Positions 769-55,955 of a DNA stretch of 64,000 nucleotides are shown here, piece by piece. The DNA lies in assembly GCA_964035545.1 (NCBI GenBank), contig OZ037765.1, positions 35,240,080 through 35,304,079 on the forward strand. The letters run 5' to 3'. The notes below the pieces were generated by a model. The model worked only from the letters and a program-made list of their open reading frames with translations, was not told the DNA's origin and made no database searches. Source of the DNA: Bugula neritina. Lineage: Eukaryota; Animalia; Bryozoa. The position numbers and the translations under genes were made by a program. Numbering within the stretch: the first letter of the stretch is position 1; each line of letters opens with the position of its first letter.

Positions 769-773
769 TTCAG

Positions 774-23400: not shown

Positions 23401-24011
23401 CCCATAGAAAGGAAACCCGCAAGTGGTACCTGTTCATAGGCAGCGCTGGGCCGCCTACGTGATCTTCCTCTATTACGCGTCGTCCTCGACAGCCATCTTC
23501 TTTCTACTCCCTGGCTAGGAGCATTTGTATTAAGTGGGATCCCACCGCTGCCACCACTGTAGTGAATTTCGCAATTCACTATATTATGTGGGTCGACTTA
23601 TACAAAGCTACTACACCAGGTTATTTAGGTTATCACAAGTTTATTATTTACAAGATACAAGAATTGAATTACTACTAACATGAATTGAACCATTACATAA
23701 TAATGAGCACTTTGCACACAACTACTCTAAGCGAAGTCCCAAGCTGCTCTGCCCAGCTAGCTACTTAGCGTGCTTCTACTACGAGTAGCGAGCTCCACCT
23801 GCTATCAATTAACAGTCAGTCCTGATTGGCTGGTATTAGTGGTGCCACTGTCGACCATAAGATACAAGTCGGCTGGAAGTTGATATAGTCTATCTCCATA
23901 ATAGCATACAACATAGAGTCGACCCTTTCGATATATAACTAACAATCAATTGCACTACTGATATCCATTACAATATTTACTGTCAACACTCCCACTAACT
24001 CCACATTGAAT

Positions 24012-29024: not shown

Positions 29025-29165
29025 AATGGCTAATCTGAAGAATCTGGAGACTCTTAATATATCATGGAATAACTTCAGTGAAGGATTACCTGATGTATTC
29101 ACATCAATGACATATCTAAGAGAGTTGGGTATTAGTGGCTGTAAACTACCAACTCTACCTGAGAG
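29025..29165 (+). CDS. LRR exon A (141 bp, 2 LRRs)
   Basis: tactatag acceptor and gttagt donor, phase 2-2; MANLKNLETLNISWNNFSEGLPDVFTSMTYLRELGISGCKLPTLPE. Confidence 0.9.
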
Positions 29166-31519
29166 GTTAGTGAAAAGACAATTTGCATAAATAACTCATA
29201 TATAGACTACTTTCTGATGTCTAAGATTTACCTGCATGTTTTTCGACTTGCATTTTTTGTTGCTAACTATTTTGTGAAAATTTATCAAGTCTGTTGAACT
29301 TGACATGAATACATGCATGTATATACAGAACAAATTCTAAATAGCATATACAGAAATAAAAATAGGCTATATGTAATATAAAAAGTGCAGGTTATGGAAT
29401 ATATAGGATTTGTTACAATATTTTAATCTATTATCTACTTCAAAGAAGTAAAAGTTAGTAAGTCAAGTTAATTAGCCATTTCTTGAAAAATAAAAAGCCT
29501 AATGAAAACAATTGTGCTCAAATAAATATATCTAGATAAACCCAGATAGCCTTTAAGCTGTTAGCATTCTGGCTTTTGTGTTACAGTTTTGTTATTTCTT
29601 AAAATGATGCCTGTGCCTTGTAGCATTTAGGAGCAGCAGTGGAGAGATTGAGATAGCCTAAGTTCTTTGAATTCCTTTATAAATTTTGTTGTTGCTCATA
29701 ACATAAATTCTTTTGCTACATTTCTAATCTAGAACGCAGGCTTTTCTCAACTTCTCCATTACTGCACCTACTTCGTATGTAGTAGTCATCTCTGTCAGCT
29801 GCAGTAGACTCAAGGTCCTAGTTAATAGTTAACGTAGGTGGTAGGTTAAAACATAGTTACATAATGAAATAGGTAAAAGGCCAAGCTAAGCCAACCACTA
29901 CTGAAGCTGAAAGCCCAAGTTTCCCAACTCATCAAATTGCAGCATAAACTGAATTCTCTGAAAACCACTTCTGAAAGAAATTCTGGTTGAAAAGTAAATT
30001 AAGCAGATTCTGACAAGGGAAGCAGTAAAAGCACATTGATAATATTGAGTTATTAACTTTTTGCTTGGGTTTTCAGTGAAACCATTTATTTTTATAGCTT
30101 CTCAACTTCTCATGCTCCAAATATCTACATCAGCTAGTCTTATTGTAACTTAGCTGTAGTTTTACAGCTGGCTTGGCTGATCCTGGGTCACAAATTGTTA
30201 TGCATAAGTGTAAACTATCATCCCTGGTTTGTAAACAAGCACAATGTGGTCTTTAGTTTCTACTGATGTTTTATTGGTAAAACTGTCGTGAAAACTATAC
30301 AATTAATGAAATTGTGAATATGCCATAATGAATGATAATATGTGATGAAACTTTTATCAGTGATAATTTGACACTAACTAATAAGCTTCAAGTAAAGAAC
30401 AAGTCTTGCTATAAAATTCAGTATACACCATCTAAATTATTGAAATTGATATTAAAAAAGATAATACAAATGCCATAAATGATTGTCAAAAATACTACAA
30501 TAACAATAATTACCTTGTTAGACCATCCAGGAATGGAGCTTATAACTTTGATGTCAATGTAGTAGGTATTTATTCTCTACTTTGATAATATTGATTTAAA
30601 TGCAACAAAAAATTTAACATAACATAAGTGAAAGGTTACTCAGCAGTTTATGCTACATGTTAGTTGACTGAAAGTGTAGCATAGAATGAGAGCTAAAAAT
30701 AAAATATACCTCAATGAATGAATCATTTCAGGAAGCTGATGGTGTAAAAAACTATTTATATAATTTAGTCATGCATAGTGAAATCATGCATATGAGGAAA
30801 TCATGTTGACTTTCGTGTGCAAATTTGTCATAGCCATAAAAGCAAAACAGCTACATATACATGACTAATTCAATGGGTTTCTAATTGGTTAACTTTGTTT
30901 GTTTTGATGAGAGCAAGAAATTTCACTGGCATTCCAATTAATTACAATAAGCGAGGATAAGTACACATCAAGTATAACATTGTAACTAAAACTGTCAAAT
31001 AAAGCTATTAGACCTATTGTAAAATAATTATGCGATAAATATATAGGGCAGACAAAATATTTCAAGATGATATTGAATTAAATTATGTCTGCTTAAATAT
31101 AAAATTTTTTAAATACTTTTTGTATAAACTGAGCTTTGCTTCTCTTAGTAACATTTTTCTTTTAAAGACGTTTTGGCCATAACACGAAACTATGTAAAGC
31201 ATTCAAGGTTCCTTGAACATAATGTAGTACAAACTCTTCAAAGTATAATTATATGCACATGCTATAACACAGCTAAGCTGCTGAGCAGGCATGTGAGTAA
31301 TTACATGTAACTAGCAGTGAAACTGGACCACTGCAGAGTTGAAAGATCAATTCAGCTATGAATTGTATAGTCATAACAGATAAGACAACAAATAATAATA
31401 GAGATTTAATCATAGTTGCCATATCAGCATTGCCCAGCAACGAAAACCACAAAAATTCGTTCAAGCATATTTTAGGCAACGGCTTTTCATGTTGGGAGGA
31501 CACAACTATTAATTATAGG

Positions 31520-32460
31520 GGGATCTCATGCAATGACACTGGAAAAGGGTCTATTGAGTTTGCTGCAGAACATACTACCATAACAGATACGGACCGCACT
31601 GTGATTTTTCACGCCAGGAAAATGCTATTATACCAATCCGGCCAACCCTGGAGGAAAAAGTGCGGCCCATTATTTGACATCACAATGGGCAGCTATGACG
31701 GTGCAAAATGTTGCACTCTGTTTGGCATATTTTAACTATATAAAATCAACCAGAAGCTTAAAAATACGTTCGGTATATACCGTGATGACGGCCTAGGAGT
31801 AACCAACGACACTGCAAAAAAATATAGATAGAATTAAAAAATCAATATGCAAAATTTTCTAAAAGTATATTCTAAAAATTACTATTGAAGTAAACCAGAA
31901 AGTTGTCAACTATATAAATATAAATTTTGACATCAGCAAAAGAATACACAAACCCCATGTAAAAGCTAACAGTGAAATTTTATATGTAAACTCTAGATTT
32001 AACCATCCTCCGCATATCACAAGAAACATCCCACAAGCCATAAACAACAGGCTTTCCAAACCTCTCATCTAACGAGGAAGTGTTTAGTCAGACAACAAAG
32101 ATGCACCAAGGAGCTCTAACTAAAAGTGGGTACACACATAACCTAACTTTCCAGCCAACACACACTACTAGCAGACCATAAAGAGGAAGAAGACGAAATA
32201 TCACATGGTATAAGCCCCCATTCTCCAAAAGTGTAACAAGTAACCTGACAAAGCATTTTTTTAAAATCCTGGAGGAAGAAATACCCAGAGATCACAAACT
32301 CTACAAAATTTTCAACAAAAACAATATAAAACTCAGTTACAGTTGCTGCAGAAATTTGAACAACATAATCAACAGCCACAATAAAATATTACTCAACCCA
32401 GCAAACCAATCTCCTCGAGAATGTAACTGCAGAAGCAACACAGTGTGCGCCTAGATAAAA
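31520..32460 (+). mobile_element. Penelope-like retroelement RT/thumb fragment (decayed)
   Basis: FDITMGSYDGA and YRDDGL motifs, N-H-P-P, HKLYKIFNKNNIKLSYSC, CNCR; multiple stops. Confidence 0.8.
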
Positions 32461-35400
32461 AATAGGAAAAGGAACAGTTGAATAGACAAGTTGTGTTTAC
32501 TCGTTTGCAATTATGTAATGCTTGTAATTTTCTGTAGTTAGTGATTCTTGTATTATTCGTAGCAATAAATTATATTCTTATTCTAAATCAGCGATATCAG
32601 TTCAACTTTAATTACCCACAATTAGGTGAATGTGTAAATTCACAACAGTGGTGGCAGCGATGGGATTGTTTTAAAGCCAATGCTCCTGGCCGAGGAGTAG
32701 GAGAGATGGCCGACAAAGGAGACATTCCTTGTCTAGAGCCGATCAAATCAGCAGCTGTGGAGAATGTCATAAGCGGCCCAGCGCTGCCTATGGACAGGCA
32801 TCATTTGCAGGCTCCAAACTTCTCCGGAGAAGAAGATGTGGAGCAATTTATCACTGAGTTCAGTGATGTGGCAGCTATCTGTCGATGGCCTGCCCGAGTT
32901 ACTCTGATCCAGCTGCAGTTGTGCTTGACGGGAACGGCCAAACCTTATGGTATTGACCAGAATGTCGGCGAGATCTTTGATGCGTTGAGAGCCAGGTGTG
33001 GGCTCACCGCCCAAGATGCGCGTATCCAACTCCAAGAACTTAGGGGAGATCGTAAGACTGCCTTGCGAGAACACGCAACTCTGGTGGAACGGCTGGCACA
33101 AGTTGCTTATGGTGATTTGCCTGCAAATGGCCGACAGAGTTTGGCACTGGATGCCTTCCTCCAGTCTATAAACAACATGGGCTTAAAAAAGCATTTGCTG
33201 GTAGCTGAAGTTGAGACAATGGAGAGGGCTCTCCGGCTTGGGAATGCCTATTTCTAAGCTGATAGTACGTGCCGGCCTAGAATGGCTGTACAGCAAATAG
33301 AGGCCGACCACGACAACGTGTCGCCATCGTCGGCCACGGCGACTGTACACGTGGCTACGGCGGCAGCCGACGAGCCGACCGGCTTCATCACAAGCCTGGT
33401 TGGAGAGCTGCTGGCCGAATCACGCATATCCGCCAACAGTCGACAGTTGAGCGACCCGCTAGGTCGCCGACAACTGTCGTCGGCAGGCGTACTCTTGTAT
33501 GTTGGGGTTGTGGTAGTGGTGGGCACCTTCTGAGGAGCTGCCTCTATGGCAGGAGGAAACAGTTAAATGACAACGGTCCACGGTGGACTCCGCCAACCGT
33601 GGACCTCGGTTTAACCCTCCGAGGCCGAGGCCAAGGCCAAGGCCAAGGCCAAGGCCAAGGCCAAGGCCAAGGCCAAGGCCAAGGCCAAGGCCAAGGCCAA
33701 GGCCAAGGCCAAGGCCCAAACCCATTCGAGTGAGGAGGCCGCCTTTGCCGGAGTGGCAAGCCCCACGGAAAGTTAGCAGACCACAAGGTTTGCCAAAACC
33801 TATGGCTTGGCCACGCAAAAAACCGCTTTGAAGTGTTTCCTGATGAGGGGGCGTACGACGAGTGGGAGCAAGACCGAGATTTCCCTTGGCTGCCCACGCA
33901 TGAGCAGGACCGAGCCTTCACTCGGCCGCCCGTGTGCGAGCAAGGCCAAGATGTAACTCGGCAACCCTTTTGCAATTGGAAAGCATAAGTGCAAACCCGA
34001 ATCCATGCACATGAGGTGTCACTTCCGGAGACAGACCGCTCAGTGGGCGCCCAGCCATATGGAAGCAGTTATTTCTTGCCCGGTAAACTTGCCGGCAAAG
34101 TTGCGACATTTCTTTTGTATACTGAGTGTACCACAAATCTCCTAAGTTGGCGTCTCTTTGACACACTCAATGCTAGAGATTGGGCAAATCTGAAGCCATA
34201 TGAAGAAGAACACCGAACGTTGGCGGACGGGTTGTGTATCCTTTTCTATTGAGTGATCAGCGAGACTTTCATCATCAGTCAGCTTAAAGAGGATGCCATC
34301 TCATGAATGCCATTCCTGAAGCAACAAAAGTGCCACATTGACTTTAGTGAGTTGGCGGTGATGCTGGCCGGGCGTGAGCTTGCTTGTGTGGATAGGTTTG
34401 GTAGACCCTTGGTGGGGGAAGTGCAGGTGGTGCGGCGCTGTACCATTACTGGGTGCTCCTGGGCCTCGGTTCACTGCAGAGTAAACTGCAAGAAAATCTC
34501 CATCTTAGAAGTGGTGGAAGGGGCACTGGGGGGCATCCAGCTCGCTAATGGCCTAAATAGGCTGGATGAGCGGGGGAGTTCCTGGTACAGTGTGTGAACC
34601 CTTTCACGGAGCCGGTAGAGTTGCCGGCTGGTTTGCTAGTGGGGAAGTTCCATTCTGTGCAGGAGGAGGATGTGGGGCTTTCTAGGAACGGCAGGGGGCC
34701 GGTGCCTGAACACTTGGCAGATTTGTACGGGGATGCCTGTGATGGCTGTGAGAATAAGCGAGAATGCCTGGTAGTGGCGCAGTTACTCTCTAAGTACAAA
34801 GATGCGTTTAGTTGCGGCGATCATGATATGGGCTTGACCAAGGCTGTCTGTCATGAGATACCCCTGGCGGCAGGGACAGGGCCTATTCGGCAGTCGACCC
34901 ACCGGTTAGGTCCCGAAAAAAAGAAAGTGAGCCGTCAGGTGCAAGACCTTCTGAACCGGGACCTGATTGAGCCAGCTCATGATCCTTGGAGCTCTCCGGT
35001 TGTCCCGGTTCGAAAAAAAGATGGGAGCTGGAGGTTTTGCGTGGATTATCGCAGACTGAACAGCGTGACCATCCAGGACGCTTACCCTCTACCGAGGATC
35101 GATGGGTCGCTGGATGCTTCAGCTGGTAGCTAGTTCTTCAGTACGCTGAACTTGTTGAGTGGGTACTGGCAGGTGCCCCTGAGTCCTGATGCACAGGACA
35201 AGGCTGCTTTTAAAACGCGGGACCGGCTCTGGAAGTGGAAGGTTCTGCCGTTAGGACTTACGTCTGCTCTGGCCACCTTCCAGCGACTCATGGAGCAGGT
35301 CTTCAATGGGCTACACTGGAAGACTCTGCTCGTCTACCTCGATGATGTCATTTTCATCATCCCGACTTCAACACCTCTGTCAGTCGTCTCAGAGAGGTGT

Positions 35401-38400
35401 TTGACAGACTTCGAGCTGCTGGTCTGAAGCTCAAGCCCTCCAAGTGTGTGTTGCTGCGACAAAAGGTTAAGTACCTAGGCCACATAGTTGGCCGAGACGG
35501 GGTCACCACCGACTCCGAGAAGGTACGGGCTGTAAGGGACCGGGCCGTTCTTGTCGACCATCCTGAATCGCAAGCATTTCTGAAGTTGGTAGGGTTCTAT
35601 AGGCAGTACAGACCCAACTTTGCAGAATGGCTCAGCCGTCAAACCGGCCTGACCGCTAAGGGAGTGCGTTGGCAGTGGACGTATGCAGAGTGGAAGCTGT
35701 GCTGTCGCAGGTCCAGAATATTCGCGATATGGTGGTGGCTCACTACAGTAAAGTTATGTCAGCCCCTGAAGAGAGCTACTGCACGACCAGGAAGCAGCTT
35801 CTGGCAGTAGTCAAGGTGGTCAAGCACTTTAGGCCATATCTGTATGAGTGTACGTTCACACTGCAAATGGATCACGCGTCCTTGATATGGTTGTGTCGAC
35901 GAGCTGAACCCTCTAGCTAATTAGCGCTGGCTTGAAATCTTGATTGAGTTTTTATACCGGATCGAGCACCGACCCGGTAAGAAACACAGTAATGCTGACG
36001 GATTGAGCCGCCGTCAGGCAGACGGGTGTAAGCAATGCCTAAACATTGAGCGCAGGGATGGACCCCATTGCTCGGACATGGAGAAGCAGATAGGGAAAGC
36101 AGGTGTATAAAGCTGGGAGGAAGGACAACTCCAGTCTGAACTTCCCTCTAAAGCTGTCAACACCTTTCATGCAAACCCTATACTGCCCCGAAACGTCAGG
36201 AAGCTGTGTAGACTCCAAGCTATGCTACCTGGGGTGGTAGCCGACTTAGTCAGGGCCAAGAAGGAGGGACGGCGGCCTAGCGAGGCTGAACGTGTTCAGA
36301 ATTCAAGTATTTCTGCAACTGCTGGAACTCCCTCCAGTTCAATGGTGATGGGTTGCTAATGATAACGTTGGCGACCGCTGTGAATCACCAGGAGCGGGAG
36401 AAGGTAGTCTGTCCGTTTGCTCTTCGCCGGGAGCTGATTTGGGAAACTCATAAGCAAGCTAATGCTGGAGCTGGGCGGTGGACTAGGTGTCTTCAGCTCT
36501 GGTGGTATTGGCCCGGCATGACCTGGGACGTCCGACTCCGTGCGGAAGTGTGAGATATGACAGGCCAGTAAGCATGGCCGCTCCACTGAGACTGCGGGGA
36601 GGCGTCGCCTCCATGCCGGTCGTTTGTGGCAGATAGTTACCGTAAATCTGGTGGGCCGCATGCCCACATCTGTGAAAGGTAATAACTGGATACTGGTACT
36701 AACTGACCACTTTACGTGGTGGGCTAATGCTCTGGCTATCCCAGATGCGTCTGCCCCCATGGTGGCCAGGACCTTAGATCAGAACGTATTCTGTTATTTC
36801 GGCGTGCCAGAACAAATACACTCTGATCAGGGCGCCCAGTTTCTGTCGCAGCTTATTAGCGATCTCTGTAAGACGTGGGGGATCAACCAGAGTCGGACGA
36901 CTCAATATTAGCCGCAAGGGAATGGGGTTGTAGTGCAGAGCAATCGTATGTTAGGCGAGTCTCTGAGAAGTCTACTATTGGGTAGGAGTCAGGAAGAGTG
37001 GGACTTGGTGCTGCCGCAAACCATGCGAGCCTACCGTAGTACCCCTCACTCCAGCCCGCTGGAGGCCCCTCGCTTTCTCATGCTCGGTCAAGTAACGCGG
37101 GTTTCTGAGCATTTAATTTACCATGTTCCGACTCCAGAAAGCAATGTCCATGAGTACGTGGACGAGCTCATTACACGCATGAGGACAGCCCACGAGGTGT
37201 TGCGTGAGCAGCAATGGCAGTTGAGGAGTGGGAACTCTGACGACCCCCTCCTTTGTCTAAGGTGGGAGACTGGGTCTGAATCACCAGTCACCGCTGGCGG
37301 CACGGACAGGCGGCTATGTTACAGCGGAAGTTTGTGGGTCTTTTCTGCGTGACTGAGGTGATGCTAGATCACACGTATAAAGTGGAACATTTCGGCCAGG
37401 TGTCGGTCCAGAATAAAACACGATTTTAGCTGTACTGGTCGAGTCTTGATGCAACAGAACAGGTCCCTCTACTCCTGGAACCTATGCGCCGTCCGACCAT
37501 GAGGGGGCGAGCTAGGGCCGACAGGGAGTTCAAGGTGGTGTTGCAAGATCAGGAAGGAGCGGCCGATGCGCCGACCAACTAGCCCCGTCCGCCCCCAACT
37601 CTGAAAGAGGCGGCCGACCAGCCGGCAGACCGGCCCGGGCCGGCCCCACCACCAGTGACGAGAGCCGACACACCTGTCATCCCTGATGAGATGGAAACTC
37701 CTCAAACTCATGAGGCGGAGGTAGCTAAGGAGGAACCACCCGTACAGGTGAACCGCCCTACACTAAAGACCCCATCCGTAGTGGTGGATTCACCGGTGGC
37801 AGCAGCCCCCCCCCCAGTACAGTTGGAACGTAGTCAACGTACTAGGGCTCCATCATCTTATTTAAAAGATTTCTTGTGTGATGCAGTGGATAAACCACCT
37901 ACACTCATCATAAAAGAAATCTGGGAGACAAGCAATTGAGAGTTGTGGTTCCTCATTATCGAGAAACACAACTGTGAGTTGCAGGCCCAGTGGCATGTAT
38001 AACTATCATCACTGGGAGAACAGAAAAGGGCGGAGTCAGCCGACCGGTAGAAGGGAGTGTTATGTAATCACTTTCACCGTGGAGAGCGCCCTTTTCAATT
38101 GTAACTGTCAATGTTCGCGCAGGTACTATGGCAGGCTGGCAACCACGTAGCCTAAGTGGACAGTAGACTAATATCGTGGTTGTCTTATGGTAAGTCTACT
38201 AGTGAAATTTCATTAGTTAATTAGAATTTAGCCTAGTAGCCAAGTTCAGTCTCACATTGTCATAATGATGAAGTTGTACTGATGTCAGATGATTTCACTG
38301 ACGACTTTGAGTAGAGTAGTCACCCGGACGACTTTGATAATCAGAAGGTTGATAGACTACTTGACTCAGTCACAGTGTCGTACCGACTAGGTGGAGTCCT

Positions 38401-38450
38401 CTACAACATAATCTGGTACCCTGTTCTGTTGCAGGTGAGACTTTGAGGAA
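32460..38450 (+). mobile_element. Second Gypsy element (relative of 17398-23972): partial 5' LTR, PBS, gag and decayed pol; no 3' LTR seen
   Basis: ...attcacaaca then gtggtggcagcgatgggat PBS at ~32648; gag-like ORF 32541-33257; RT/RH/IN fragments 34594-37939 colinear with the nested copy. Confidence 0.9.
33620..33716. repeat. (GGCCAA)n hexamer microsatellite inside the Gypsy gag region
   Basis: Direct reading, ~15 units. Confidence 0.95.
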
Positions 38451-39009
38451 CTTGAAGATAGATTCTATGACCACCAGCCATGCAGTCGCCCCTCCCCCCT
38501 CCCCCCCGTTCTCTTCTTTCTAATTTCAAGTGGACCGCTCTTGACCGGTTTGAGGAGATGACAACGTAATCTTCTCAGTGATGACAAGATGCATAGCATC
38601 AGGCGGCTGTAATGGGCTGGTGGTATATTAGTTGGCGGTCTCTTTATTCCTATCATGATATAACTCTGTAGCTGGGGTCGAAGACCTGAGCAGCAATATC
38701 CTTCGTCACCCTGAACTGAGACCGCGACTGTGCCATAGCAGATATAGTAACATAATATTTTTAATAGTGAATATTTACTCATATAGAAAATAATGATATT
38801 AGTATATGTATAGCTGGGAGGGGATTTCTGCCTAGTTTTATTGCCCTAGTGACTAAAGGAAAAAAAGGGGGGGGGGGGCTTCAAATTTTGATCCTCAACT
38901 CTGATCGTTAAAGTGTCGGCTAGAGACACATGTGATGTCGGAAATATTTTGATGATTATCTTATCATTCATTTATTCTTTTTGTTTTGTTTTTGTTCTCT
39001 TTTGTAAAT

Positions 39010-39435
39010 TTTTAATACGCGTCAGATGGAAAGCTTTCTTCTACTTAAACCCAGACTGCAAGCCTACTACCAGCAAACTAACACCTTACATTAAAGAATT
39101 AGACCACTTTGAAACTGAAATATTCAACCTACTAGCCAACATCAGGTTTGAACCATTTACAAATTAACTACAAACCGAAATTAGAAATAATGTAAAGGAT
39201 ATATAAGATGATGACAAACCGCTAGTGAAAGCTGCCAAAACTACTAATTTCTACAAAATATCTACTTTTCAATACTGAGATTTTGTTAAACAAAACATTA
39301 CCAAAGAGTAAAAAAAGCCCCACATGGCCTAGCTAAATCAATCACAACAAAGGATCGACATCACAATCGCCAAATCACTAAATTTAGACACCAGAATAGA
39401 AGTACTGGCCAAGAAAGAAGCATTTATTACATTTT
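39010..39435 (+). mobile_element. Penelope-like element N-terminal ORF fragment
   Basis: RVRWKAFFYLNP, LVKAAKTTNFYK, IAKSLNLDTRIE...AFIT motifs typical of the region upstream of PLE RT. Confidence 0.7.
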
Positions 39436-39632
39436 TTTGAATGCTGGCAAGTTGATAAGAGTTTGTTTTGTTTGTTTAAAATACACATTTGCGTTAAACA
39501 CTATACATGACACATAGTATAGAGAGTGGCAGTTATTACAAATTATTTAAACTGAGGAAGATAATCTTGTTTTTTATATTACGTGAGTTAACAATTATAC
39601 TGATTTCTTTACATAAAAATGAGTTGGAGTTG

Positions 39633-39635
<3 letters not shown>

Positions 39636-39719
<84 letters not shown>
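39636..39719. repeat. (AT)n microsatellite
   Basis: Direct reading. Confidence 0.97.
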
Positions 39720-39721
<2 letters not shown>

Positions 39722-39779
39722 GTATATAGAAACAACATGGATTAGTGAAAGGTGTGTAGAGTTGAGTAGTGTAGAGCTT

Positions 39780-40370
39780 ATTGGTAAAGTTTTAGTGGTA
39801 TGTAGCAATTTTGTTTATTCAGTTGAGGTTTTACTGTTTAACGTAAAAAGCTTCAGCTAATTTTCGATGATGGATTCCTTTAAATGACTGATTTAGAACT
39901 GTTACATTGTCTAATTATACGTTTCCATGGTTAGTAGTGGAGATATGAGAATATATTTTCATAGTAATTTCATGGTAATGTTCATTTATCCTGTGTGATA
40001 GGCAACGCCAATTTCGCCTATAATATAGGTTTGTTGACGTGAAGCTTCAGAGCAGGTTATTTTGTAAACTATGTTGTGTAAGTGTTCTTTACTAGTTTTG
40101 TCTTTGAGGTTGGAATGTGAATTTAAGGAAGTTCCTTTGAATATAATTCGGGCGTTGATTCATTTGGAAGTGAGTCTGCAATGAATTTGTTGAGGAAATG
40201 AAATAGCTTTCCTCCTGCTACTCTTTTATAATTAGCTAGTTGAAGTAAAATATTATGTTTCCTGTTGTCCTTTTCACGGAGTAGTCCGTCACTAATGTTG
40301 GTAACAGTTTTCTCTATTACGTATATACAATTTAAATTTGATCAATTGTTGCTAATTCTTCTTCAATTGG
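39780..40370 (-). mobile_element. 3' fragment of another Penelope-like element (GIY-YIG end)
   Basis: Minus strand gives YIGEIG... and RKLAEAFYVKQ...PQLNKQ, degenerate. Confidence 0.55.
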
Positions 40371-40532
40371 GAAGTTGATATATCATGCAAGACCAAACTT
40401 ATAATAGTGTCACTAAATTTCTTCAAAGTTCAAATAAGTCTGCTAAATTTTTTTTAAACACATTTTATTTCCTATAAAAATAGATAGATGTATACTTCAT
40501 ATCACATGTCAACTAGTATATGTTTACTATAG

Positions 40533-40673
40533 CATGTCTAACCTGGAGAATCTGGAAACTCTTAATATATCAGGGAATAACTTCAGTGAAGGATTACCTG
40601 ATGTATTCACATCAATGACATCTCTAAGAGAGTTGCTTATGTATAACTGTGAACTACCAACTCTACCTGAGAG
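40533..40673 (+). CDS. LRR exon B
   Basis: 141 bp, phase 2-2; MSNLENLETLNISGNNFSEGLPDVFTSMTSLRELLMYNCELPTLPE. Confidence 0.9.
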
Positions 40674-41823
40674 GTTAGTAAATGCAAGCACCCTCCTAGT
40701 GTTTTGCCTCCATGTTTATAGACATGCACCTCCTGTTGCTATGTACTGTTAAAATTATTGCAAATTTGTTATTCTGTATTTAAAGTTGACCAAAAATATA
40801 AAATTTACCTACCTGTATGTTTTGAGACTTACATTTTTTTGCTAAATAATCTGTGAAAATCTCTCAAATCTGTTGAATGTTTGCTTATATGATGTATACA
40901 ATATGCAGATAAATATATGCTAATAAAGAGATGCTATGTAATATTATGACATGTGGTTATATGAAATAAATAAGACATGTTCCAATATTTTAATTTCCTA
41001 CTTAATGCTTGAATTAAGTAGAAGTTATAGTAAGCTGAGTTTATTAGACTTTTCTTGAAGAATAAATTAAGATGAAACTTTACTATACATGTCATCTTGC
41101 AGACTAAAACAAGGCGCTGATCTAACAATATAATACAAAAGTGATATAATTGATAATTAAATAAATCATACCGTCTTTTATTATACTATAAACAATGTTT
41201 AACTTTATTTTAATGCTTTATATTACTTTTTAAATTTAAGGGTAAAAAAAAACAAATACTCTTAGCAAATGACCTGTAATCATGGAAAATATAAGCTAAT
41301 GAAGATATGCTACGTAATGCTATAACGCCAATAATCTAATTTCCTATAATGCTTGAATTACGTAAAAATTACAGTAATAGCTGAGTTTATTAGAATTTTC
41401 TTGAAAAATAAAACGCTGAAGCCTTATTATGTAATATCCTGCAGACTAAAATCAGGCTTTCAATATAATGTATAGTTGATTAGGTGTTATAAATAATTAT
41501 TAATTTAAATTTGAAGTTTGAAACAGAAATGAAATATTTTAGCAAATTACCTGTAAGTATGACAAATATTATTATATATATGAATAAAATGCTAGTTGTA
41601 TATTTTGTACTCAGCTTAAGGTTTTCAAAATAAAGACTCATGCAGTATATTTCACATGTATATGTGAGATTCATATCTACTGATGTCTTTTATTCCAACT
41701 TTATACTCCATTAGATGAAATTTATTATATATCAATGAGAAACTTTATGCTAGAATTATATTTCTATTCCTTTAGATGGTTGTATTACTATATGATGTCT
41801 CAACTAGTATATGTTTACTATAG

Positions 41824-41964
41824 CATGTCTAATCTGAAGAATCTGGAGACTCTTAATATGTTAGGGAATAACTTCAGTGAAGGATTACCTGATGTAGTCA
41901 CATCAATGACATCTCTAAGGAAGTTGTATATTAGTGGCTGTAGACTACCAACTCTACCTGAAAG
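41824..41964 (+). CDS. LRR exon C
   Basis: 141 bp, phase 2-2; ...LNMLGNNFSEGLPDVVTSMTSLRKLYISGCRLPTLPE. Confidence 0.9.
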
Positions 41965-42836
41965 GTTAGTAAATGCAAGCACGTCCTCCTAGTGCTTTGT
42001 CTCCATGTTTATAGACATGCATCTCCTGTTGCTATGTATTGTTAAAATTATTGCAAATTTCTCATTCTGTATTTAAAGTTAACCAAAAATCTAAAGGGTT
42101 TATGTGTATGTTTTGAGACTTACACTTTTTTTGCTAACTAATCTGTGAAAACATCTCAAATCTGTTAAATATTTGCTTATATGATGTATACAATATGCAG
42201 ATAAATATAAGCTAATAAAGAGATGCTATGTAATATTATGACATGTGGTTATATGAAATATATAAGACATGTTTCAATATTTTAAATTCCTATTATGCTT
42301 GAATTAAGTAGAAGTTATAGTAAGCTGAGTTTATTAGAATTTTCTTGAAAAATAAAAAGCTTAAGATTTATTATGTAATATCCTGCAGACTAAAATCAGG
42401 TTCTGATCTAGCAATATAATGTATAGTTGGTATCTAAATAAGTTATACAGTCGTTTGTCATACTATAAGCAGTAATAACCTTTAATTGAAGTGTTATAAA
42501 TAATTAATTTGTATTTTGAAGTATGAAACAAAAATGAATTATTTTAGCAATTATCTGTAACTATGACAAATATTATTATATATAAAATATAAATGCATGA
42601 AATGTGAAGGGTATATACTTTGTATTCAGCTTGATGTTGAAAAAAAGGACTCATGCAGTATATTTCACATGTATATGTGAGATTCATATCTACTGATGTC
42701 TTTTATTCCAACTTTATCTTCCATTAAATGAAATTTATTATATATCAATGGGAAACTTTATGCTAGAATTATATTTCTATTGCTTTAGATGGTTGTATTA
42801 CTACATGATGTCTCAACTAGTATATGTTTACTATAG

Positions 42837-42977
42837 CATGTCTAATCTGAAGAATCTGGAGACTCTTAATATGCCATGGAATAACTTCAGTAAAGGATTA
42901 CCTGATGTAGTCACATCAATGACATCTCTAAGACAGTTGGATATTAGTCACTGTAACCTACCAACTCTACCTGAGAG
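42837..42977 (+). CDS. LRR exon D
   Basis: 141 bp, phase 2-2; ...LNMPWNNFSKGLPDVVTSMTSLRQLDISHCNLPTLPE. Confidence 0.9.
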
Positions 42978-43446
42978 GTTAGTAAATGCAAGCACCCTCC
43001 TAGTGTTTTGCTTCCATGTTTATAGACATGCATCTCCTGTTGCTATGTATTGTTAAAATTATTGCAAATTTCTTATTCTGTATTTAAAGTTAAGCAAAAA
43101 TCTAGAATTTACCTGCATGTTTTAAGACTTACATTTTTTTTGTTAACTAATCTGTGGAAATTTCTTAAATCTGTGGAATGTTTTCTTATCTGATGTATAC
43201 AATATGCAGATAAATATAAGCTAATAAAGAGATGCTATGTAATATTATGACATGAGGTTATGGAATATATAAGACATGTTCCAATATTTTAATTTTCTAT
43301 AATGCTTGAATTAAGTAGAAGTTATAGTAAGCTGAGTTTATTAGAATTTTCTTGAAAAAAAATAAATTAAGCTTAGACTTTACTACATGTCACTTGCAGA
43401 CTAAAACAAGGTGCTGATCTAGCAATATAATGCAAAAGTAATATAA

Positions 43447-44598
43447 GGGTCATTCCATGTCAACTCAACAAAGTTTTTGAAGATTGTCACCGACCCGTTT
43501 CAGATTTTTTTGAGACCCTAGTATGGTATTTCAAAACATGCCAATTAAAAAAATCTCAAATATTAGCCCATAATTCCTAATAGTTTTATAGTTACGGCAC
43601 TTTTTGTGTGCAAAGGTTGGTAAAAAGTCGGTACTTTTTCATGGGTTTCAGTACCGAAGGTCAACTTCATAGATTTATATCTCGGAGAAGATTCAAGACA
43701 AACCTTTCATCCTTTTATGGATGATAGTTCTACATGACTTTAATCAACTAAAAGCAAAGGACTTGCCATAAATGTTGATCAGAAAAACTCTCTGTTGTAT
43801 TACGTTTTCAGGTCAAAAACTTGGTAGTTTTTCAAAATCGTCAATTTTTAGGCGCCTAAAATTCACCTTTTGCAAATAGCTATGAACTTCATATTTTAGC
43901 ACCTAATAAATATATTATATAAATCATATTAGAAAAGATTCAGTTTTTTACTGGCATAAGTGTGTTGAAATATTAAAATCTGAAAATTATGCATTTTTTC
44001 ATGCATGAGCTCATGCATGAAAAAATACATAATTTTCTAGGAGAAAACTAAATGTGGGTATAAATGAACTTTTTTAAAAATGGTTTCATTTCAGGTGATT
44101 GTGATGAATCTTATCCCAGTAAAAAGCTGAGACTTTTCTAATGTGATATATATATATAACAAAGTTTTTAGGTGCTAAAAATATCAAGATCATAGCTATT
44201 TGTAAAAGGTGAGTTTTAAGTGCCGGAGAATTGACGATTTTGAAAAATTACCAAATTTTTGGCCTAAAAACGTAATGCAACAGAACTTTTTTCTCAACAC
44301 TTATGGCAGATTTTTTGCTTCAATTTAAATAAAATCATGTAGAACTATCATCCATAAATGTATGAAAGGTTTGTCTTGAATCTTCTCCGGGATATAAATT
44401 TATGAAGTTGACCTTCGGTACTGAAACCCATGAAAGAAGGACTGATTTTTTTTACAAACCTTTGCTCACAAAAAGTGCCATAACTACAAAACTACCAGGA
44501 ATTAAGAGCTAATATTTATTATTTTTTTATTTGACATGTTCTAGAATACTCTACTAAAATTTTGGTTTTGGCCTTGTTGAGTTGGCGTGGAATGACCC
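43447..44598. mobile_element. Palindromic foldback non-autonomous DNA element, copy 1
   Basis: Termini gggtcattccatgtcaactcaacaa / ttgttgagttggcgtggaatgaccc; halves are inverted copies around ttttttcatgcatgagctcatgcatgaaaaaa (~43995-44026). Confidence 0.88.
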
Positions 44599-44697
44599 AT
44601 ACATCAATGGGAAACTTTATGCTAGAATTATACTTCCATTGCTTCAGATGGTTGTATTACTATACATGATGTCTCAACTAGTATATGTTTACTGTAG

Positions 44698-44838
44698 CAT
44701 GTCTAATCTGAAGAATCTGGAGACTCTTGATGTGTCAGAGAATAACTTCAATGAAGGATTACCTGATTTAGTCACATCAATGACATCTCTAAGGAAGTTG
44801 AATATAAAGAGATGTGAACTACCAACTCTACCTGAGAG
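44698..44838 (+). CDS. LRR exon E
   Basis: 141 bp, phase 2-2; ...LDVSENNFNEGLPDLVTSMTSLRKLNIKRCELPTLPE. Confidence 0.9.
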
Positions 44839-45709
44839 GTTAGTAAATGCAAGCACCCTCCTAGTGTTTTCCCTCCATGTTTATAGACATGCATCTCCTG
44901 TTGCTATGTATTGTTAAAATTATTGCAAGTTTCTTATTTTGTATTTAAAGTTAACCAAAAATCTAGAATTTACCTGCATGTTTTGAGACTTACATTTTTT
45001 TTGCTATAAAAAATCTGTGAAAATTTCTCAAATCTGTTGAATGTTTGCCTATATGATGTATACAATATGCAAGTAAATATAAGCTAATAAAGAGATGCTA
45101 TGTAATATTATGACATGTGGTTATGGAATATATAAGACATGTTCCGATATTTTAATTTCCTATAATGCTTGAGTTAAGTAGAAGTTATAGTAAGCTGAGT
45201 TTATTAGACTTTTCTTGTAAAATAAAAAGCTTAAGCTTTATTATGTAATATCCTGCAGACTAAAATCAGGTTCTGATGTAGCAATATAATGTATAGTTGG
45301 TATCTAAATAAGTTATACAGTCGTTTGTTATACTATAAGCAGTAATAACCTTTAATTGAAGTGTTATAAATAATTAATTTGTATTTTGAAGTATGAAACA
45401 AAAATGAATTATTTTAGCAATTATCTGTAACTATGACAAATATTATTATATATAAAAATATAAATGCATAAACTGTGAAGGGTATATACTTTGTATTCAG
45501 CTTGGTGTTGAAAAAAAGGACTCATGCAGTATATTTCACATGTGTATGTGAGATTCACATCTACTGAAGTCTTTTATTCCAACTTTATATACTCCATTAA
45601 ATGAAATTTATTATACATCAATGGGAAACTTTATGCTAGAATTATATTTCTATTGCTTTAGATGGTTGTATTACTACATGATGTCTCAACTAGTATATGT
45701 TTACTATAG

Positions 45710-45850
45710 CATGTCTAATCTGAAGAATCTGGAGACTCTTAATATGTCAAGGAATAACTTCAGTAAAGGATTACCTGATGTATTCACATCAATGACATTT
45801 CTAAGACAGTTGGATATTAGTCACTGTAACCTACCAACTCTACCTGAGAG
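45710..45850 (+). CDS. LRR exon F
   Basis: 141 bp, phase 2-2; ...LNMSRNNFSKGLPDVFTSMTFLRQLDISHCNLPTLPE. Confidence 0.9.
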
Positions 45851-46321
45851 GTTAGTAAATGCAAGCACCCTCCTAGTGTTTTGCTTCCATGTTTATAGAC
45901 ATGCATCTCCTGTTGCTATGTATTGTTTAAATTATTGCAAATTTCTCATTCTATATTTAAAGTTAACCAAAAATCTAGAATTTACCTGTATGTTTTGTGA
46001 CTTACATTTTTTTTGCTAACTCATCTGTGGAAATTTCCTAAATCTGTGGAATGTTTGCTTATATGATGTATACAATATGCAAATAAATATAAGCTAATAA
46101 AGAGATGCTACGTAATATTATGACATGTGGTTATATGGAATATATAAGACATGTTCCAATACTCTAATTTTCTATAATGTTTGAATTAAGTAAAAGTTAT
46201 AGTAAGCTGAGTTTATTAGCCTTTTCTTGAAAAAAAATAAATTAAGCTTAAACTTTACTACATGTCACTTGCAGACTAAAACAAGGTGCTGATCTAGCCA
46301 TATAATACAAAAGTAATATAA

Positions 46322-47474
46322 GGGTCATTCCATGTCAACTCAACAAAGTTTTTGAAGATTTTCACTGACCCGTTTCAGATTTTTTTGAGACCCTAGTATG
46401 GTATTTCAAAATATGTCAATTGAAAAAATCTCAAATATTAGCCCATAATTCCTAATAGTTTCATAGTTATGGCACTTTTTGTGAGCAAAGGTTGGTAAAA
46501 AATCAGTCCTTTTTTCATGGGTTTCAGTACCGAAGGTCAACTTCATAGATTTATATCTCAGAGACGATTCAATACAAACCTTTCATACATTTATGGATGA
46601 TAGTTCTACATGATTTTATTCAACTAAAAGCAAAAGACTTGCCATGAATGTTGATCAGAAAAACTCTCTGTTGTATTACGTTTTCAGGTCAAAAACTTGG
46701 TAGTTTTTCAAAATCGTCAATTTTTAGGCGCCTAAAATTCACCTTTTGCAAATAGCTATGAACTTCATATTTTTAGCACCTAATAAATATATTATATAAA
46801 TCATTTTAGAAAAGATTCAGTTTTTTACTGGCATAAGTGTGTTGAAATATTAAAATCTGAAAATTATGCATTTTTTCATGCATGAGCTCATGCATGAAAA
46901 AATGCATAATTTTCTAGGAGAAAACTAAATGTGGGTATAAATGAACTTTTTTAAAAATGGTTTCATTTCAGGTGATTGTGATGAATCTTATCCCAGTAAA
47001 AAGCTGAGACTTTTCTAATGTGATATATATATATAACAAAGTATGTAGGTGCTAAAAATATCAAGATCATAGCTATTTGTAAAAGGTGAGTTTTAAGTGC
47101 CGGAGAATTGACGATTTTGAAAAATTACCAAATTTTTGGCCTAAAAACGCAATGCAACAGAATATTTTTCTCAACACTTATGGCAGATTTTTTGCTTTTA
47201 GTTGAATAAAATCATGTAGAACTATCATCCATAAATGTATGAAAGGTTTGTATTGAATCGTCTCCGAGATATAAATCTATGAAGTTGACCTTCCGTACCG
47301 AAACCCATGAAAGAAGGACTGATTTTTTTACAAACCTTTGCTCACAAAAAGTGCCATAACTACAAAACTACCAGGAATTAAGAGCTAATATTTATTATTT
47401 TTTCATTTGACATGTTCTAGAATACTCTACTAAAATTTTGGTTTTGGCCTTGTTGAGTTGGCGTGGAATGACCC
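46322..47474. mobile_element. Palindromic foldback element, copy 2 (co-duplicated with the LRR unit)
   Basis: Same termini and identical flanking junctions as 43447-44598. Confidence 0.88.
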
Positions 47475-47575
47475 ATACATCAATAAGAAACTTTATGCTA
47501 GAATTACATTTCCTTTTACTCTGATGCATGGTTGTATTACTACATGATGTCTCAACTAGTATATGTTTACTATAG

Positions 47576-47716
47576 CATGTCTAATCTGAAGAATCTGGAG
47601 ACTCTTGATGTGTCAGAGAATAACTTCAGTAAAGGATTACCTGATGTATTCACATCAATGACATCTCTAAGAAAGTTGGATATTAGTCACTGTAACCTAC
47701 CAACTCTACCTGAGAG
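47576..47716 (+). CDS. LRR exon G
   Basis: 141 bp, phase 2-2; ...LDVSENNFSKGLPDVFTSMTSLRKLDISHCNLPTLPE. Confidence 0.9.
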
Positions 47717-48188
47717 GTTAGTAAATGCAAGCACCCTCCTAGTGTTTTGCTTCCATGTTTATAGACATGCATCTCCTGTTGCTATGTATTGTTAAAATTA
47801 TTGCAAATTTCTCATTCTATATTTAAAGTTAACCAAAAATCTAGAATTTACCTGTATGTTTTGTGACTTACATTTTTTTTTGCTAACTAATCTGTGGAAA
47901 TTTCCTAAATCTGTGGAATGTTTGCTTATATGATGTATACAATATGCAAATAAATATAAGCTAATAAAGAGATGCTACGTAATATTATGACATGTGGTTA
48001 TATGGAATATATAAGACATGTTCCAATACTCTAATTTTCTATAATGTTTGAATTAAGTAAAAGTTATAGTAAGCTGAGTTTATTAGCCTTTTCTTGAAAA
48101 AAAATAAATTAAGCTTAAACTTTACTACATGTCACTTGCAGACTAAAACAAGGTGCTGATCTAGCCATATAATACAAAAGTAATATAA

Positions 48189-48744
48189 GGGTCATTCCAT
48201 GTCAACTCAACAAAGTTTTTGAAGATTTTCACTGACCCGTTTCAGATTTTTTTGAGACCCTAGTATGGTATTTCAAAATATGTCAATTGAAAAAATCTCA
48301 AATATTAGCCCATAATTCCTAATAGTTTCATAGTTATGGCACTTTTTGTGTGCAAAGGTTGGTAAAAAATCAGTCCTTTTTTCATGGGTTTCAGTACCGA
48401 AGGTCAACTTCATAGATTTATATCTCGGAGAAGATTCAAGACAAACCTTTCATACTTTTATGGATGATAGTTCTACATGATTTTATTCAACTAAAAGCAA
48501 AAGACTTGCCATGAATGTTGATCAGAAAAACTCTCTGTTGTATTACGTTTTCAGGTCAAAAACTTGGTAGTTTTTCAAAATCGTCAATTTTTAGGCGCCT
48601 AAAATTCACCTTTTGCAAATAGCTATGAACTTCATATTTTTAGCACCTAATAAATATATTATATAAATCATTTTAGAAAAGATTCAGTTTTTTACTGGCA
48701 TAAGTGTGTTGAAATATTAAAATCTGAAAATTATGCATTTTTTC
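48189..48744. mobile_element. Palindromic foldback element, copy 3, left half only
   Basis: Identity to copies 1 and 2 stops at ...ttatgcattttttc, the centre of the palindrome. Confidence 0.85.
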
Positions 48745-48955
48745 CAGTATATATTTTCCTAGAATGTTGTTTAGAGACATAAATAAACTGCCTATGCACA
48801 ACATACTTTGCATCTGTTTAGTATCTCGTAATTAGACATAAAAAAATCAAAGCCAATTATAAGGCAAAAGACCATAATACTGTACTATCATTGGATAGTT
48901 CTTCATCAATAAACAGGTAGTCGCCAGTGGTGGATATGAACCCCTCCTAGATCTT

Positions 48956-55756: not shown

Positions 55757-55955
55757 TCACCTTTGCAACATAATTCAATAATTGCATGGTCAAGCAGAAT
55801 AAACTACAATTAACAGCAACAACAGTGTAATAGTTGCGTAGAAAAGTTGTACTGCAAAAAACTAAAAGAATGCAAAATCTATAAATGTGTGCTACCAAGT
55901 AAATGCTGAACAGACATCATGAAATAGTGTACGAAATACAAACTATTAAACTTAC

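What the first reader, a model, noticed from the sequence alone, without database searches (positions are those of the whole stretch)
29025..47716. Array of symmetric 141-bp LRR exon cassettes hypervariable only at ligand-facing positions
Seen: seven exons of identical length and phase (2-2) each encode a 24+23-aa LRR pair. Framework codons and flanking intron sequence are nearly identical. Residues in and next to the LxxLxLxxN/C strand differ sharply: NISW/NISG/NMLG/NMPW/DVSE/NMSR/DVSE and ELGISGCK/ELLMYNCE/KLYISGCR/QLDISHCN/KLNIKRCE/QLDISHCN/KLDISHCN. By eye, differences are mostly non-synonymous and clustered. Established: these positions form the concave binding surface, as in plant NLRs and lamprey VLRs. 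No signal peptide is evident in the predicted N-terminus. Inference: a diversifying intracellular immune receptor built from shuffleable exon modules.
Basis: partly seen in the sequence, partly recalled or inferred. Interest (0 to 1): 0.88.

Follow-up and report, generated by a model that had tools for sequence, protein, structure and literature searches.

The report
Bryozoan ROCO-caspase gene's variable LRR exons
The seven repeated exons are real and form the front half of the sensor arm of a moss-animal gene that joins leucine-rich repeats, a GTPase switch and a caspase; only their predicted binding-face residues change fast, as in immune receptors, but the function is untested.

Summary
Observation confirmed. 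Seven 141-bp exons with ag/gt borders and intron phase 2-2 each encode a 24+23-aa LRR pair.

Selection: the framework is almost invariant, even at third codon positions. Codons 11, 14, 33, 35, 37, 38 and 40 are near saturation. M1a/M2a on the seven exons gives LRT 34 (p=4e-8, omega about 15). In recent duplicates the strand-face codons differ 5 times more than the introns beside them.

New for this locus: the array is not a gene of its own.
- The intron after exon 7 resumes 32.3 kb later, after a young high-copy transposon flanked by a 17-bp target duplication.
- It leads into six more cassettes, a Roc-COR exon and caspase exons.
- The gene is therefore a ROCO-caspase, not an NLR.

The same 141-bp cassettes occur in Watersipora subatra. 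The closest published parallel is exon shuffling in brown-alga LRR-ROCO genes (PMC11378527).

RNA-like runs cover only the exons and hold exon-exon junctions, but this is evidence for the family, not for this gene. Immune function is inferred.

The scan found the same family at least eight times elsewhere in this genome, including both neighbouring arrays.

The parts
15874..16102 (+). Candidate 5' coding exon. It is about 76 codons long, its end is LRR-like, and its donor gtaagt leaves phase 2, which fits the first cassette. The start codon is not located.
   Evidence: sequence and frame; 80% identical to the 5' region of the upstream paralogue; weak match (E 0.35) to residues 43-86 of the Watersipora homologue P0194. 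Pfam finds nothing.
20000..27877 (-). Ty3/Gypsy-type and Ty1/Copia-type retrotransposon ORFs inserted in intron 1. They are not part of the gene's function.
   Evidence: RVT_1, RNase H; RVT_2, rve, gag_pre-integrs; 17188-28156 is absent from the paralogue's intron.
29025..29165 (+). LRR cassette exon 1 (141 bp, phase 2-2)
40533..40673 (+). LRR cassette exon 2
41824..41964 (+). LRR cassette exon 3
42837..42977 (+). LRR cassette exon 4. It is a recent duplicate of exon 6; the introns between them are 95.4-95.8% identical.
44698..44838 (+). LRR cassette exon 5. It is the duplicate partner of exon 7.
45710..45850 (+). LRR cassette exon 6
47576..47716 (+). LRR cassette exon 7. Its nearest relative is cassette 8, beyond the window at L006:7807-7947.
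47717..48744 (+). First part of the intron after exon 7, 99.2% identical to 45851-46877. It ends in the left copy of a 17-bp target-site duplication (48728-48744).
48745..64000 (.). Start of a 32.3-kb transposon insertion that runs on to L006:7091. Both its ends are 98-99% identical to many copies in the genome. A nested reverse-transcriptase ORF lies at 49300-50520 (-).

Best explanation
The seven exons are cassettes 1-7 of a 13-cassette leucine-rich-repeat arm of one large gene of a bryozoan. The genome's size and chromosome number match the Bugula neritina assembly.

Gene layout: a 5' exon near 15.9 kb; seven cassettes in the window; a 34-kb intron swollen by a young transposon; six more cassettes; one 659-codon exon with the last LRRs plus a Roc GTPase and COR; then caspase exons with intact catalytic motifs. 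Every cassette, the 5' exon's donor and the Roc exon's acceptor are in phase 2. Gain, loss or skipping of any cassette therefore keeps the reading frame.

Germline history: the arm grew by tandem duplication of exon-plus-intron units, of one exon (about 1 kb) and of two exons (2.9 kb). Units were probably also exchanged with the paralogue 45 kb upstream. The framework stays almost invariant. Residues in and just after the two beta-strands (x5 and x8 of the first repeat; x3, x5, x7, x8 and x10 of the second) are driven apart by positive selection.

Inferred mechanism: the concave face of a cytosolic LRR horseshoe binds a variable ligand, either pathogen-derived or non-self. Binding releases the Roc-COR switch, and the fused caspase is activated by proximity to cleave substrates or kill the cell.

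Shown here: exon anatomy, continuity of the array, domain content, the selection pattern, and conservation of the design in a second bryozoan.

Inferred: transcription of this copy, ligand binding, the switch mechanism, and an immune or allorecognition role.
For: - Anatomy.
- One array split by an insertion. 45851-46877 matches 47717-48744 at 99.2%, and 46861-47716 matches 81092-81947 at 98.3%. One search shows the 17-bp duplication at both junctions. Searches show the insert's ends are a 98-99% identical high-copy element.
- No Roc, COR or caspase lies between 47717 and 81800, and no second 5' exon lies before cassette 8.
- Domains: Roc 29.3 bits (cut-off 27), COR-A E 5.6e-4, Peptidase_C14 38 and 48.5 bits. 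P-loop GNTMAGKT, DLGG, SHG and QACSG are present.
- Diversity: pi is 0.050 in the framework (0.037 at third positions) against 0.377 at the seven hypervariable codons.
- Site models: M2a versus M1a gives LRT 34.1 for the 7 exons, 62.6 for 13 and 112.7 for 22. M8 versus M7 gives 120.8. Omega is about 13-15 in about 20% of codons.
- A partition fixed beforehand on xxLxLxx, with its own synonymous rate, gives omega 2.6 (p=0.009) and 1.75 (p=0.005).
- Recent duplicates: face codons show 14/108 differences against 121/4304 in introns (odds ratio 5.1, p=4e-6). The framework shows 9/315, the intron rate.
- Structure: an AlphaFold model of the Watersipora homologue (pLDDT 86.7) places the strands at cassette codons 9-13 and 33-37. 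It matches LRR solenoids, including the Chlorobium Roco LRR domain.
- Conservation: the same 141-bp phase-2 cassettes lie next to a caspase gene in Watersipora.
- Transcription: RNA-like runs cover only the exon bins, and their contigs join cassette ends to cassette starts at the predicted borders.
Against: - No read or contig proves that this gene's own exons are joined, least of all 47716 to 81807 across the 34-kb intron. The RNA-like contigs are short, fit several cassettes and show mismatches. No run is on record as RNA.
- The start codon is not found. An ATG at 15806 is GTG in the paralogue.
- COR-A is below Pfam's cut-off.
- My site models are my own implementation, with fixed topology and proportional branch lengths. 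They ignore recombination and site-specific synonymous rates, which can inflate such tests.
- Synonymous diversity is itself higher at the face codons.
- Two selected sites (25, 42) lie outside the strands.
- No experiment links any member of this family to immunity.
Confidence: 0.68

Rival explanations
1. The seven cassettes are a severed remnant. The 32-kb transposon cut the gene, so the 5' exon and cassettes 1-7 are no longer spliced to the Roc-COR-caspase part. They are either silent or give an LRR-only product. The downstream half then runs from another promoter or is dead as well.
For: A 32.3-kb insertion sits in the intron after exon 7, and a 34-kb intron is very long for a 216-Mb genome. 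Two further introns carry retrotransposons. There is no gene-specific transcript evidence. The insert belongs to a family whose copies are 98-99% identical, so it is recent and decay would not yet be visible.
Against: All 13 cassettes keep open frames and canonical ag/gt borders. The downstream half has no 5' exon of its own. An intronic insertion need not stop splicing. The Roc and caspase motifs are intact.
Confidence: 0.15
2. There is no positive selection. The surface positions are merely unconstrained or mutation-prone, while gene conversion and purifying selection keep the rest of the exon uniform. The contrast only looks like diversifying selection.
For: Framework synonymous sites are about 8 times less diverse than introns. 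That points to homogenisation or nucleotide-level constraint, which lowers dS and inflates dN/dS. Synonymous differences are also raised at the face codons. Homoplasy is pervasive: mean incompatibility is 0.64 per pair of informative sites.
Against: In recent duplicates the framework diverges at exactly the intron rate while the face codons diverge 5 times faster. Neutral sites cannot exceed the intron rate in this way. At the hypervariable codons the first and second positions (pi 0.59 and 0.32) vary more than the third (0.22), the opposite of a mutational hot spot. With a separate synonymous rate for the face partition, omega is still 1.75-2.6.
Confidence: 0.07
3. The main source of diversity is not the germline. 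Cells choose among the cassettes by alternative splicing, as in brown-alga ROCOs or Dscam, or rearrange them somatically, as in lamprey VLRs. One gene would then give many receptors.
For: All borders are in phase 2 and all cassettes have equal length, so any subset stays in frame. About 30-40 nt of intron on each side is conserved in all copies. One RNA-like contig fits a join of exon 5 to exon 7. Alternative splicing of LRR exons is reported for Ectocarpus ROCOs (PMC11378527).
Against: That contig has only 24 letters past the joint, and these are identical in exons 6 and 7, so it proves no skipping. The cassettes are ordinary exons with splice sites, not spliceless donor cassettes. No rearranged DNA form was seen in the DNA run over 41760-47750. 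Germline duplication and selection already explain the pattern.
Confidence: 0.08

Closest known systems
Brown-alga LRR-ROCO genes with shuffled LRR exons (Zambounis et al. 2012, PMC3341825; Teng et al. 2024, PMC11378527)
   Same: LRR-Roc-COR order. Tandem LRR exons of constant length, all in phase 2. Intense exon duplication. PAML M2/M8 sites on the concave face. Proposed as candidate immune receptors, and equally untested.
   Different: There, one LRR sits in each 72-bp exon; here, two LRRs (24+23 aa) sit in each 141-bp exon. This is an animal, not an alga. A caspase is fused behind COR. Alternative splicing is documented there and not here.
Human MFHAS1/MASL1, the name RefSeq gives the Watersipora homologues
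   Same: A cytosolic LRR-Roc-COR protein of the ROCO family with SHOC2-like 23-24-residue repeats.
   Different: MFHAS1 is a single conserved gene with no caspase and no cassette array. The bryozoan genes form a large, fast-evolving family: at least 95 cassette candidates and dozens of ~690-codon Roc ORFs. Orthology was not tested.
Prokaryotic AP-GTPase/COR conflict systems with rapidly evolving N-terminal LRRs and variable C-terminal effectors (Kaur et al. 2021, PMC8195603)
   Same: The same sensor-switch-effector logic. One of the best matches to the cassette, P0045, is an LRR-Roc-COR protein ending in a conflict-system GT4 domain.
   Different: Those proteins have no introns or exon modules. 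The effector here is a metazoan-type caspase.
Vertebrate NLR and ribonuclease-inhibitor LRR exons (own knowledge: 171-bp symmetric exons, each with a 28+29-aa repeat pair)
   Same: One exon holds one pair of alternating LRRs with symmetric phase, and expansion is by exon duplication.
   Different: The LRR class differs (RI-type against SHOC2/typical type). The NTPase is NACHT rather than Roc. I did not test this comparison with tools.
Plant NLR LRR domains and lamprey VLRs
   Same: Hypervariability confined to the xxLxLxx strand and the loop that follows it.
   Different: There is no NB-ARC or NACHT domain here. VLR cassettes lack splice sites and are copied in somatically; these are spliceable exons in a complete germline gene.

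Membership tests
Leucine-rich repeat (typical/SHOC2-like 23-24-residue class) | LxxLxLxxN/CxL core repeated every 23-24 residues, folding into a beta-strand/helix solenoid | tested here: met
   Pfam LRR_1 scores 29.8 bits (cut-off 20.6) on one exon. The model of the 47%-identical Watersipora arm has pLDDT 86.7, strands every 23-24 residues, and TM 0.75-0.83 to solved LRR proteins.
ROCO family | Roc GTPase domain with P-loop and switch II | tested here: met
   PF08477 scores 29.3 bits (cut-off 27) in L008:300-2276. GNTMAGKT and DLGG are present. This holds for the gene only if the two array halves are one gene.
ROCO family | COR domain directly behind Roc | tested here: inconclusive
   COR-A scores 20.3 bits, E 5.6e-4, below the cut-off of 35.3. 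Paralogues and homologues carry COR-A and COR-B hits.
Caspase (Peptidase_C14) | Caspase fold with catalytic His (SHG) and Cys (QACxG) | tested here: met
   PF00656 scores 38 and 48.5 bits on two exons. SHG and QACSG are present. These exons lie beyond the window, at L008:3388-4858.
NLR (NACHT or NB-ARC plus LRR) | Central STAND NTPase (NACHT/NB-ARC) | tested here: not met
   The only NTPase found behind the array is Roc. No NACHT or NB-ARC hit appeared in the pieces scanned. The window was not scanned exhaustively for NACHT.
Brown-alga-type shuffled-exon LRR-ROCO | Each LRR unit on its own constant-length phase-2 exon, tandemly duplicated, with positively selected concave-face sites | tested here: met
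   The unit is two LRRs in 141 bp instead of one in 72 bp. This is convergence or parallelism; common descent of the exon design was not tested.
VLR-like somatic cassette assembly | Incomplete germline gene flanked by spliceless donor cassettes, with rearranged DNA in lymphocyte-like cells | tested here: not met
   The cassettes have canonical ag/gt borders and lie in order within one gene. The DNA run X6 shows no rearranged joint over 41760-47750. Tissue-specific DNA cannot be tested here.
Secreted or membrane LRR receptor (TLR-like) | Signal peptide, transmembrane segment, cysteine-rich caps | tested here: inconclusive
   None is seen in the 5' exon or in the Watersipora N-terminus, but the true first exon of this gene is not identified.

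The most novel reading that the evidence does not exclude
The phase-neutral cassettes are used combinatorially. Regulated exon choice, guided by the conserved 30-40 nt intron flanks, would give each colony or cell type a different set of LRR arms from each of the dozens of ROCO-caspase genes. That would be an animal counterpart of brown-alga ROCO splicing and of Dscam, acting in immunity or in colony self/non-self recognition.
Probability: 0.1. Interest if true: 0.85.

Novelty: new variant of a known kind. Interest (0 to 1): 0.6.

Why it matters
Animals are known to sense intracellular danger mainly through NLRs. Here an animal uses a different switch, Roc-COR as in LRRK2 and MFHAS1, wired directly to a caspase. 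It also diversifies the sensor with frame-neutral exon modules under strong positive selection. That design has been published only for brown algae, with bacterial counterparts that lack introns.

If the family is functional, it offers a one-chain sensor-switch-executioner in which to study how ROCO GTPases are activated by their LRR arm. It is also a candidate for pathogen or allorecognition specificity in a colonial animal.

This locus adds a natural experiment. A very recent 32-kb transposon insertion lies inside the array, and duplicates as little as 0.5% diverged show replacement changes accumulating faster than intron changes.

Tried and rejected
- Roc, COR and caspase exons between 47717 and 81800, searched on both strands by tblastn with the downstream gene's pieces: none found. 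That ruled out a compact gene of its own and led to the split-array reading.
- A second 5' exon ahead of cassette 8: none found.
- The genome-wide Roc scan did not list this locus, because only 150 of 345 candidates were scored.
- RNA evidence: no run is on record as RNA. The single read-laying run gave family-level support only.
- A protein search with cassette 8 returned only unspliced genomic ORFs from a metagenome. The join of exon 7 to exon 8 remains unproven.
- Recombination: a PHI-like permutation test gave p=0.57, 0.48 and 0.17. It is inconclusive, because homoplasy is high at all distances.
- Start codon: an ATG at 15806 with a possible 55-nt intron was considered. I rejected it as unsupported, because the paralogue has GTG there and the donor is weak.
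- Pfam finds nothing in the 5' exon or in the GC-rich insert at 32.5-37.3 kb. I take the latter for a retroelement remnant by eye only.
The spliced protein of this gene was never built, searched or folded. A public Watersipora protein served as the structural stand-in.
- Complex prediction, the protein-atlas search and the RNA-model tools were not needed.
Full report
**1. The observation**

A gap-free scan with one exon as probe finds exactly seven 141-nt copies on the + strand. They lie at 29025, 40533, 41824, 42837, 44698, 45710 and 47576.
- Each is bounded by ...tag| and |gttagt.
- Each is open in one frame, with one base before the first full codon and two after the last. That is intron phase 2 on both sides.
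- Each encodes a 24-residue and a 23-residue leucine-rich repeat. Pfam LRR_1 scores 29.8 bits on a single exon.

The repeat finder shows that whole exon-plus-intron units are duplicated, with start-to-start spacings of about 1012 and 1864 bp, which add up to a 2.9-kb two-exon unit. The window is AT-rich animal DNA with GC-rich islands that are retrotransposons.

**2. What the array belongs to**

I tested this on 90 kb of flanking DNA.
- The same cassette occurs nine times upstream (window coordinates -18335 to -12967) and six times downstream (81807 to 93140).
- Behind the downstream six lies one 659-codon exon (L008:300-2276) with terminal LRRs, Roc (29.3 bits, cut-off 27) and COR-A (E 5.6e-4, below cut-off).
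- Caspase exons follow (Peptidase_C14, 38 and 48.5 bits).
- The P-loop GNTMAGKT, switch II DLGG and the caspase motifs SHG and QACSG are present.

Between my exon 7 and the downstream array there is no Roc, COR or caspase on either strand. The downstream array also has no copy of the 5' region that my array and the upstream gene share.

The decisive result is:
- The intron after exon 7 (47717-48744) is 99.2% identical to the first 1028 nt of the preceding long intron.
- The 715 nt in front of the first downstream cassette, together with that cassette, are 98.3% identical to the rest of that intron plus exon 7.
- The two matches overlap by 17 nt. That string (AAATTATGCATTTTTTC) stands at both junctions.
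- The 32.3 kb in between starts and ends with sequences found at 98-99% identity at dozens of places in the genome. Paired ends elsewhere lie 20-37 kb apart.

So a young, large transposable element has landed in one intron of a single array of 13 cassettes.

The 5' exon (15874-16102) ends with a consensus donor in phase 2. The Roc exon starts in phase 2. Every cassette is therefore frame-neutral.

Introns 1 and 2 also carry retroelements. A broken half-cassette lies at 93439-93497, beyond the window.

The genome has 216,009,554 bases and nine chromosome-sized contigs. This matches the published Bugula neritina assembly (216.00 Mb, nine pseudomolecules; PMC11480708). A GenBank B. neritina protein with Roc, COR and caspase is a 37%-identical paralogue. 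The locus lies about 0.35 Mb from the end of a 35.6-Mb contig.

**3. Is the variation more than relaxed constraint?**

I used the 22 local cassettes and 65 intact ones from four further arrays.

Diversity by position:

| Class of sites | Nucleotide diversity (pi) |
|---|---|
| Framework codons, all positions | 0.050 |
| Framework codons, third positions | 0.037 |
| Seven hypervariable codons | 0.377 |
| Hypervariable codons, positions 1 / 2 / 3 | 0.59 / 0.32 / 0.22 |
| Introns within ~30-40 nt of the exon | 0.07-0.14 |
| Introns beyond ~40 nt | 0.3-0.48 |

Nei-Gojobori dN/dS is 2.0 for the seven exons and 2.8 for the 13.

I wrote the codon site models myself, with the topology from IQ-TREE and one scale factor for branch lengths.

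| Test | Exons | LRT | p |
|---|---|---|---|
| M2a vs M1a | the 7 of the finding | 34.1 | 4e-8 |
| M2a vs M1a | the 13 of this gene | 62.6 | 2.5e-14 |
| M2a vs M1a | the 22 local | 112.7 | 3e-25 |
| M8 vs M7 | the 22 local | 120.8 | 6e-27 |

About a fifth of the codons fall in a class with omega 13-15. The selected sites are 8, 11, 14, 25, 33, 35, 37, 38 and 40, with 12 or 42 in some sets.

Such tests are vulnerable to recombination and to variable synonymous rates, so I added two controls.
- A partition fixed beforehand on the textbook xxLxLxx positions, given its own rate, still has omega 2.6 (p=0.009) among the 22 local cassettes and 1.75 (p=0.005) among all 65.
- In the three youngest duplicate pairs, whose introns differ by 0.5-4.6%, the face codons show 14 differences in 108 sites against 121 in 4304 intron sites (odds ratio 5.1, p=4e-6). 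The framework shows 9 in 315, exactly the intron rate. Of the 23 exon differences, 21 lie in amino-acid-changing codons.

A permutation test for recombination was uninformative. Two-exon units are 93% identical between this gene and the upstream paralogue, while their non-repeated 5' regions are 80-87% identical and the Roc-COR exon 88%. This suggests exchange or concerted evolution between arrays.

One point stays unexplained. Framework synonymous sites are about 8 times less diverse than introns. That calls for homogenisation by conversion or for selection on the nucleotide sequence itself.

**4. Where the variable residues sit**

The best database match to a cassette is a Watersipora subatra RefSeq protein (47% identical, nine repeats). 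Its longer isoform is named MFHAS1 homolog.

Its LRR arm folds with pLDDT 86.7 into a regular solenoid. The model resembles Leptospira LRR proteins, SHOC2 and the LRR domain of the Chlorobium Roco protein.

In cassette numbering:
- The strands are codons 9-13 and 33-37.
- Sites 11, 33, 35 and 37 are alternate strand residues.
- Sites 14 and 38 open the loop after the strand, and site 40 lies in that loop.
- Site 25 sits in the short helix and site 42 before the next helix, so not all selected sites are on the concave face.

The Watersipora gene has the same 141-bp phase-2 exons, separated by ~85-bp introns. It is followed 38 bp later by a caspase gene model. The design therefore predates the split of these two cheilostome families.

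**5. Transcription**

No run is on record as RNA.
- One run covers introns and exons alike, so it is DNA.
- Three runs, one of them labelled RNA-Seq, cover almost only the five exon bins. In the RNA-Seq run the exon bins are often more than 20-fold deeper than the intron bins.
- Those three runs hold contigs that pass from a cassette end straight into a cassette start at the predicted borders.

The contigs are 38-88 nt long, mostly fit several cassettes, and carry mismatches. One has an upstream end that is not this gene's exon 2. This shows that cassettes of the family are spliced as predicted. It does not show that this copy is expressed or that exon 7 is joined to cassette 8. A protein search with cassette 8 found only unspliced genomic ORFs.

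**6. Mechanism and comparison**

The best-supported reading is a cytosolic one-chain sensor (LRR arm), switch (Roc-COR) and effector (caspase). Its sensor is diversified in the germline by duplication and exchange of frame-neutral exons and by positive selection.

The closest published system is the LRR-ROCO family of brown algae. It has one LRR per 72-bp phase-2 exon, M2/M8 sites on the concave face and alternative splicing, and is also only a candidate receptor (PMC11378527, PMC3341825).

Bacterial AP-GTPase/COR proteins with fast-evolving LRRs and swappable effectors follow the same logic (PMC8195603). One of them is among the best matches to the cassette.

It is not an NLR, because there is no NACHT or NB-ARC domain. 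It is not VLR-like, because the cassettes are ordinary exons.

I rate it a new variant of a known kind. The scan has already described the same family at least eight times elsewhere in this genome, including both neighbouring arrays. I verified the neighbours myself but not the reported family size.

What is new here is the split-array structure, the recent transposon insertion, the exon-versus-intron rate contrast in very young duplicates, and the Watersipora exon conservation.

Noticed in passing
window 48745-64000, continuing to L006:7091: A giant young transposable element. Its first 215 nt and last 600 nt recur at 98-99% identity at dozens of loci, and paired ends elsewhere lie 20-37 kb apart. 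Here it is flanked by a 17-bp target duplication, begins CAGTAT... and ends ...ATACTGTG. There are few long ORFs inside, apart from a nested reverse transcriptase at 49300-50520 (-). Its class is unknown.
   Followed up: partly
window 15064-15420: A ~355-bp high-copy element, 92-94% identical at 40 or more loci. Its two ~78-nt ends match each other in reverse, so it is MITE-like. It sits just upstream of the gene's 5' exon.
   Followed up: no
window 46394-46837 and 46987-47432 (also 43519-43960, 48261-48704 and L006:7222-7667): Each long intron holds a ~445-nt inverted repeat pair, 85-86% complementary, with a ~150-nt spacer. The 32-kb transposon landed inside that spacer.
   Followed up: no
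window 29025-47716 and the other local cassettes: Framework third codon positions (pi 0.037) are about 8 times less diverse than introns beyond 40 nt (0.3-0.48). This is unexplained: exon-centred gene conversion or selection on the nucleotide sequence.
   Followed up: partly
window 1-11049 and L004: The upstream paralogue carries two successive sets of caspase exons (about -1947 to 902 and 5976 to 9219). A long low-complexity ORF follows at 9757-11046. Other first-stage notes concern these.
   Followed up: no
L007:9439-9497 (window coordinate 93439-93497): A broken 14th cassette. It starts normally (MSNLKNLDTLNMSGNNFSE) and then degenerates into a stop. It lies between the last intact cassette and the Roc exon.
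   Followed up: no
window 32541-37349: A GC-rich (50-54%) block in intron 2 with ORFs on the + strand that resemble a retroelement integrase by eye. Pfam found nothing in two of the ORFs within it (32541-33254 and 36912-37349).
   Followed up: partly
G000 contigs C5, C6, C1, C3 and C7: Dozens of stop-free ORFs of ~680-730 codons match Roc at positions 2-97 with ~35-38 bits, clustered at C6 2.6-6.2 Mb, C5 11.6 Mb and C1 34.2-35.1 Mb, among other places. They are probably single-exon Roc-COR parts of the same family.
   Followed up: no
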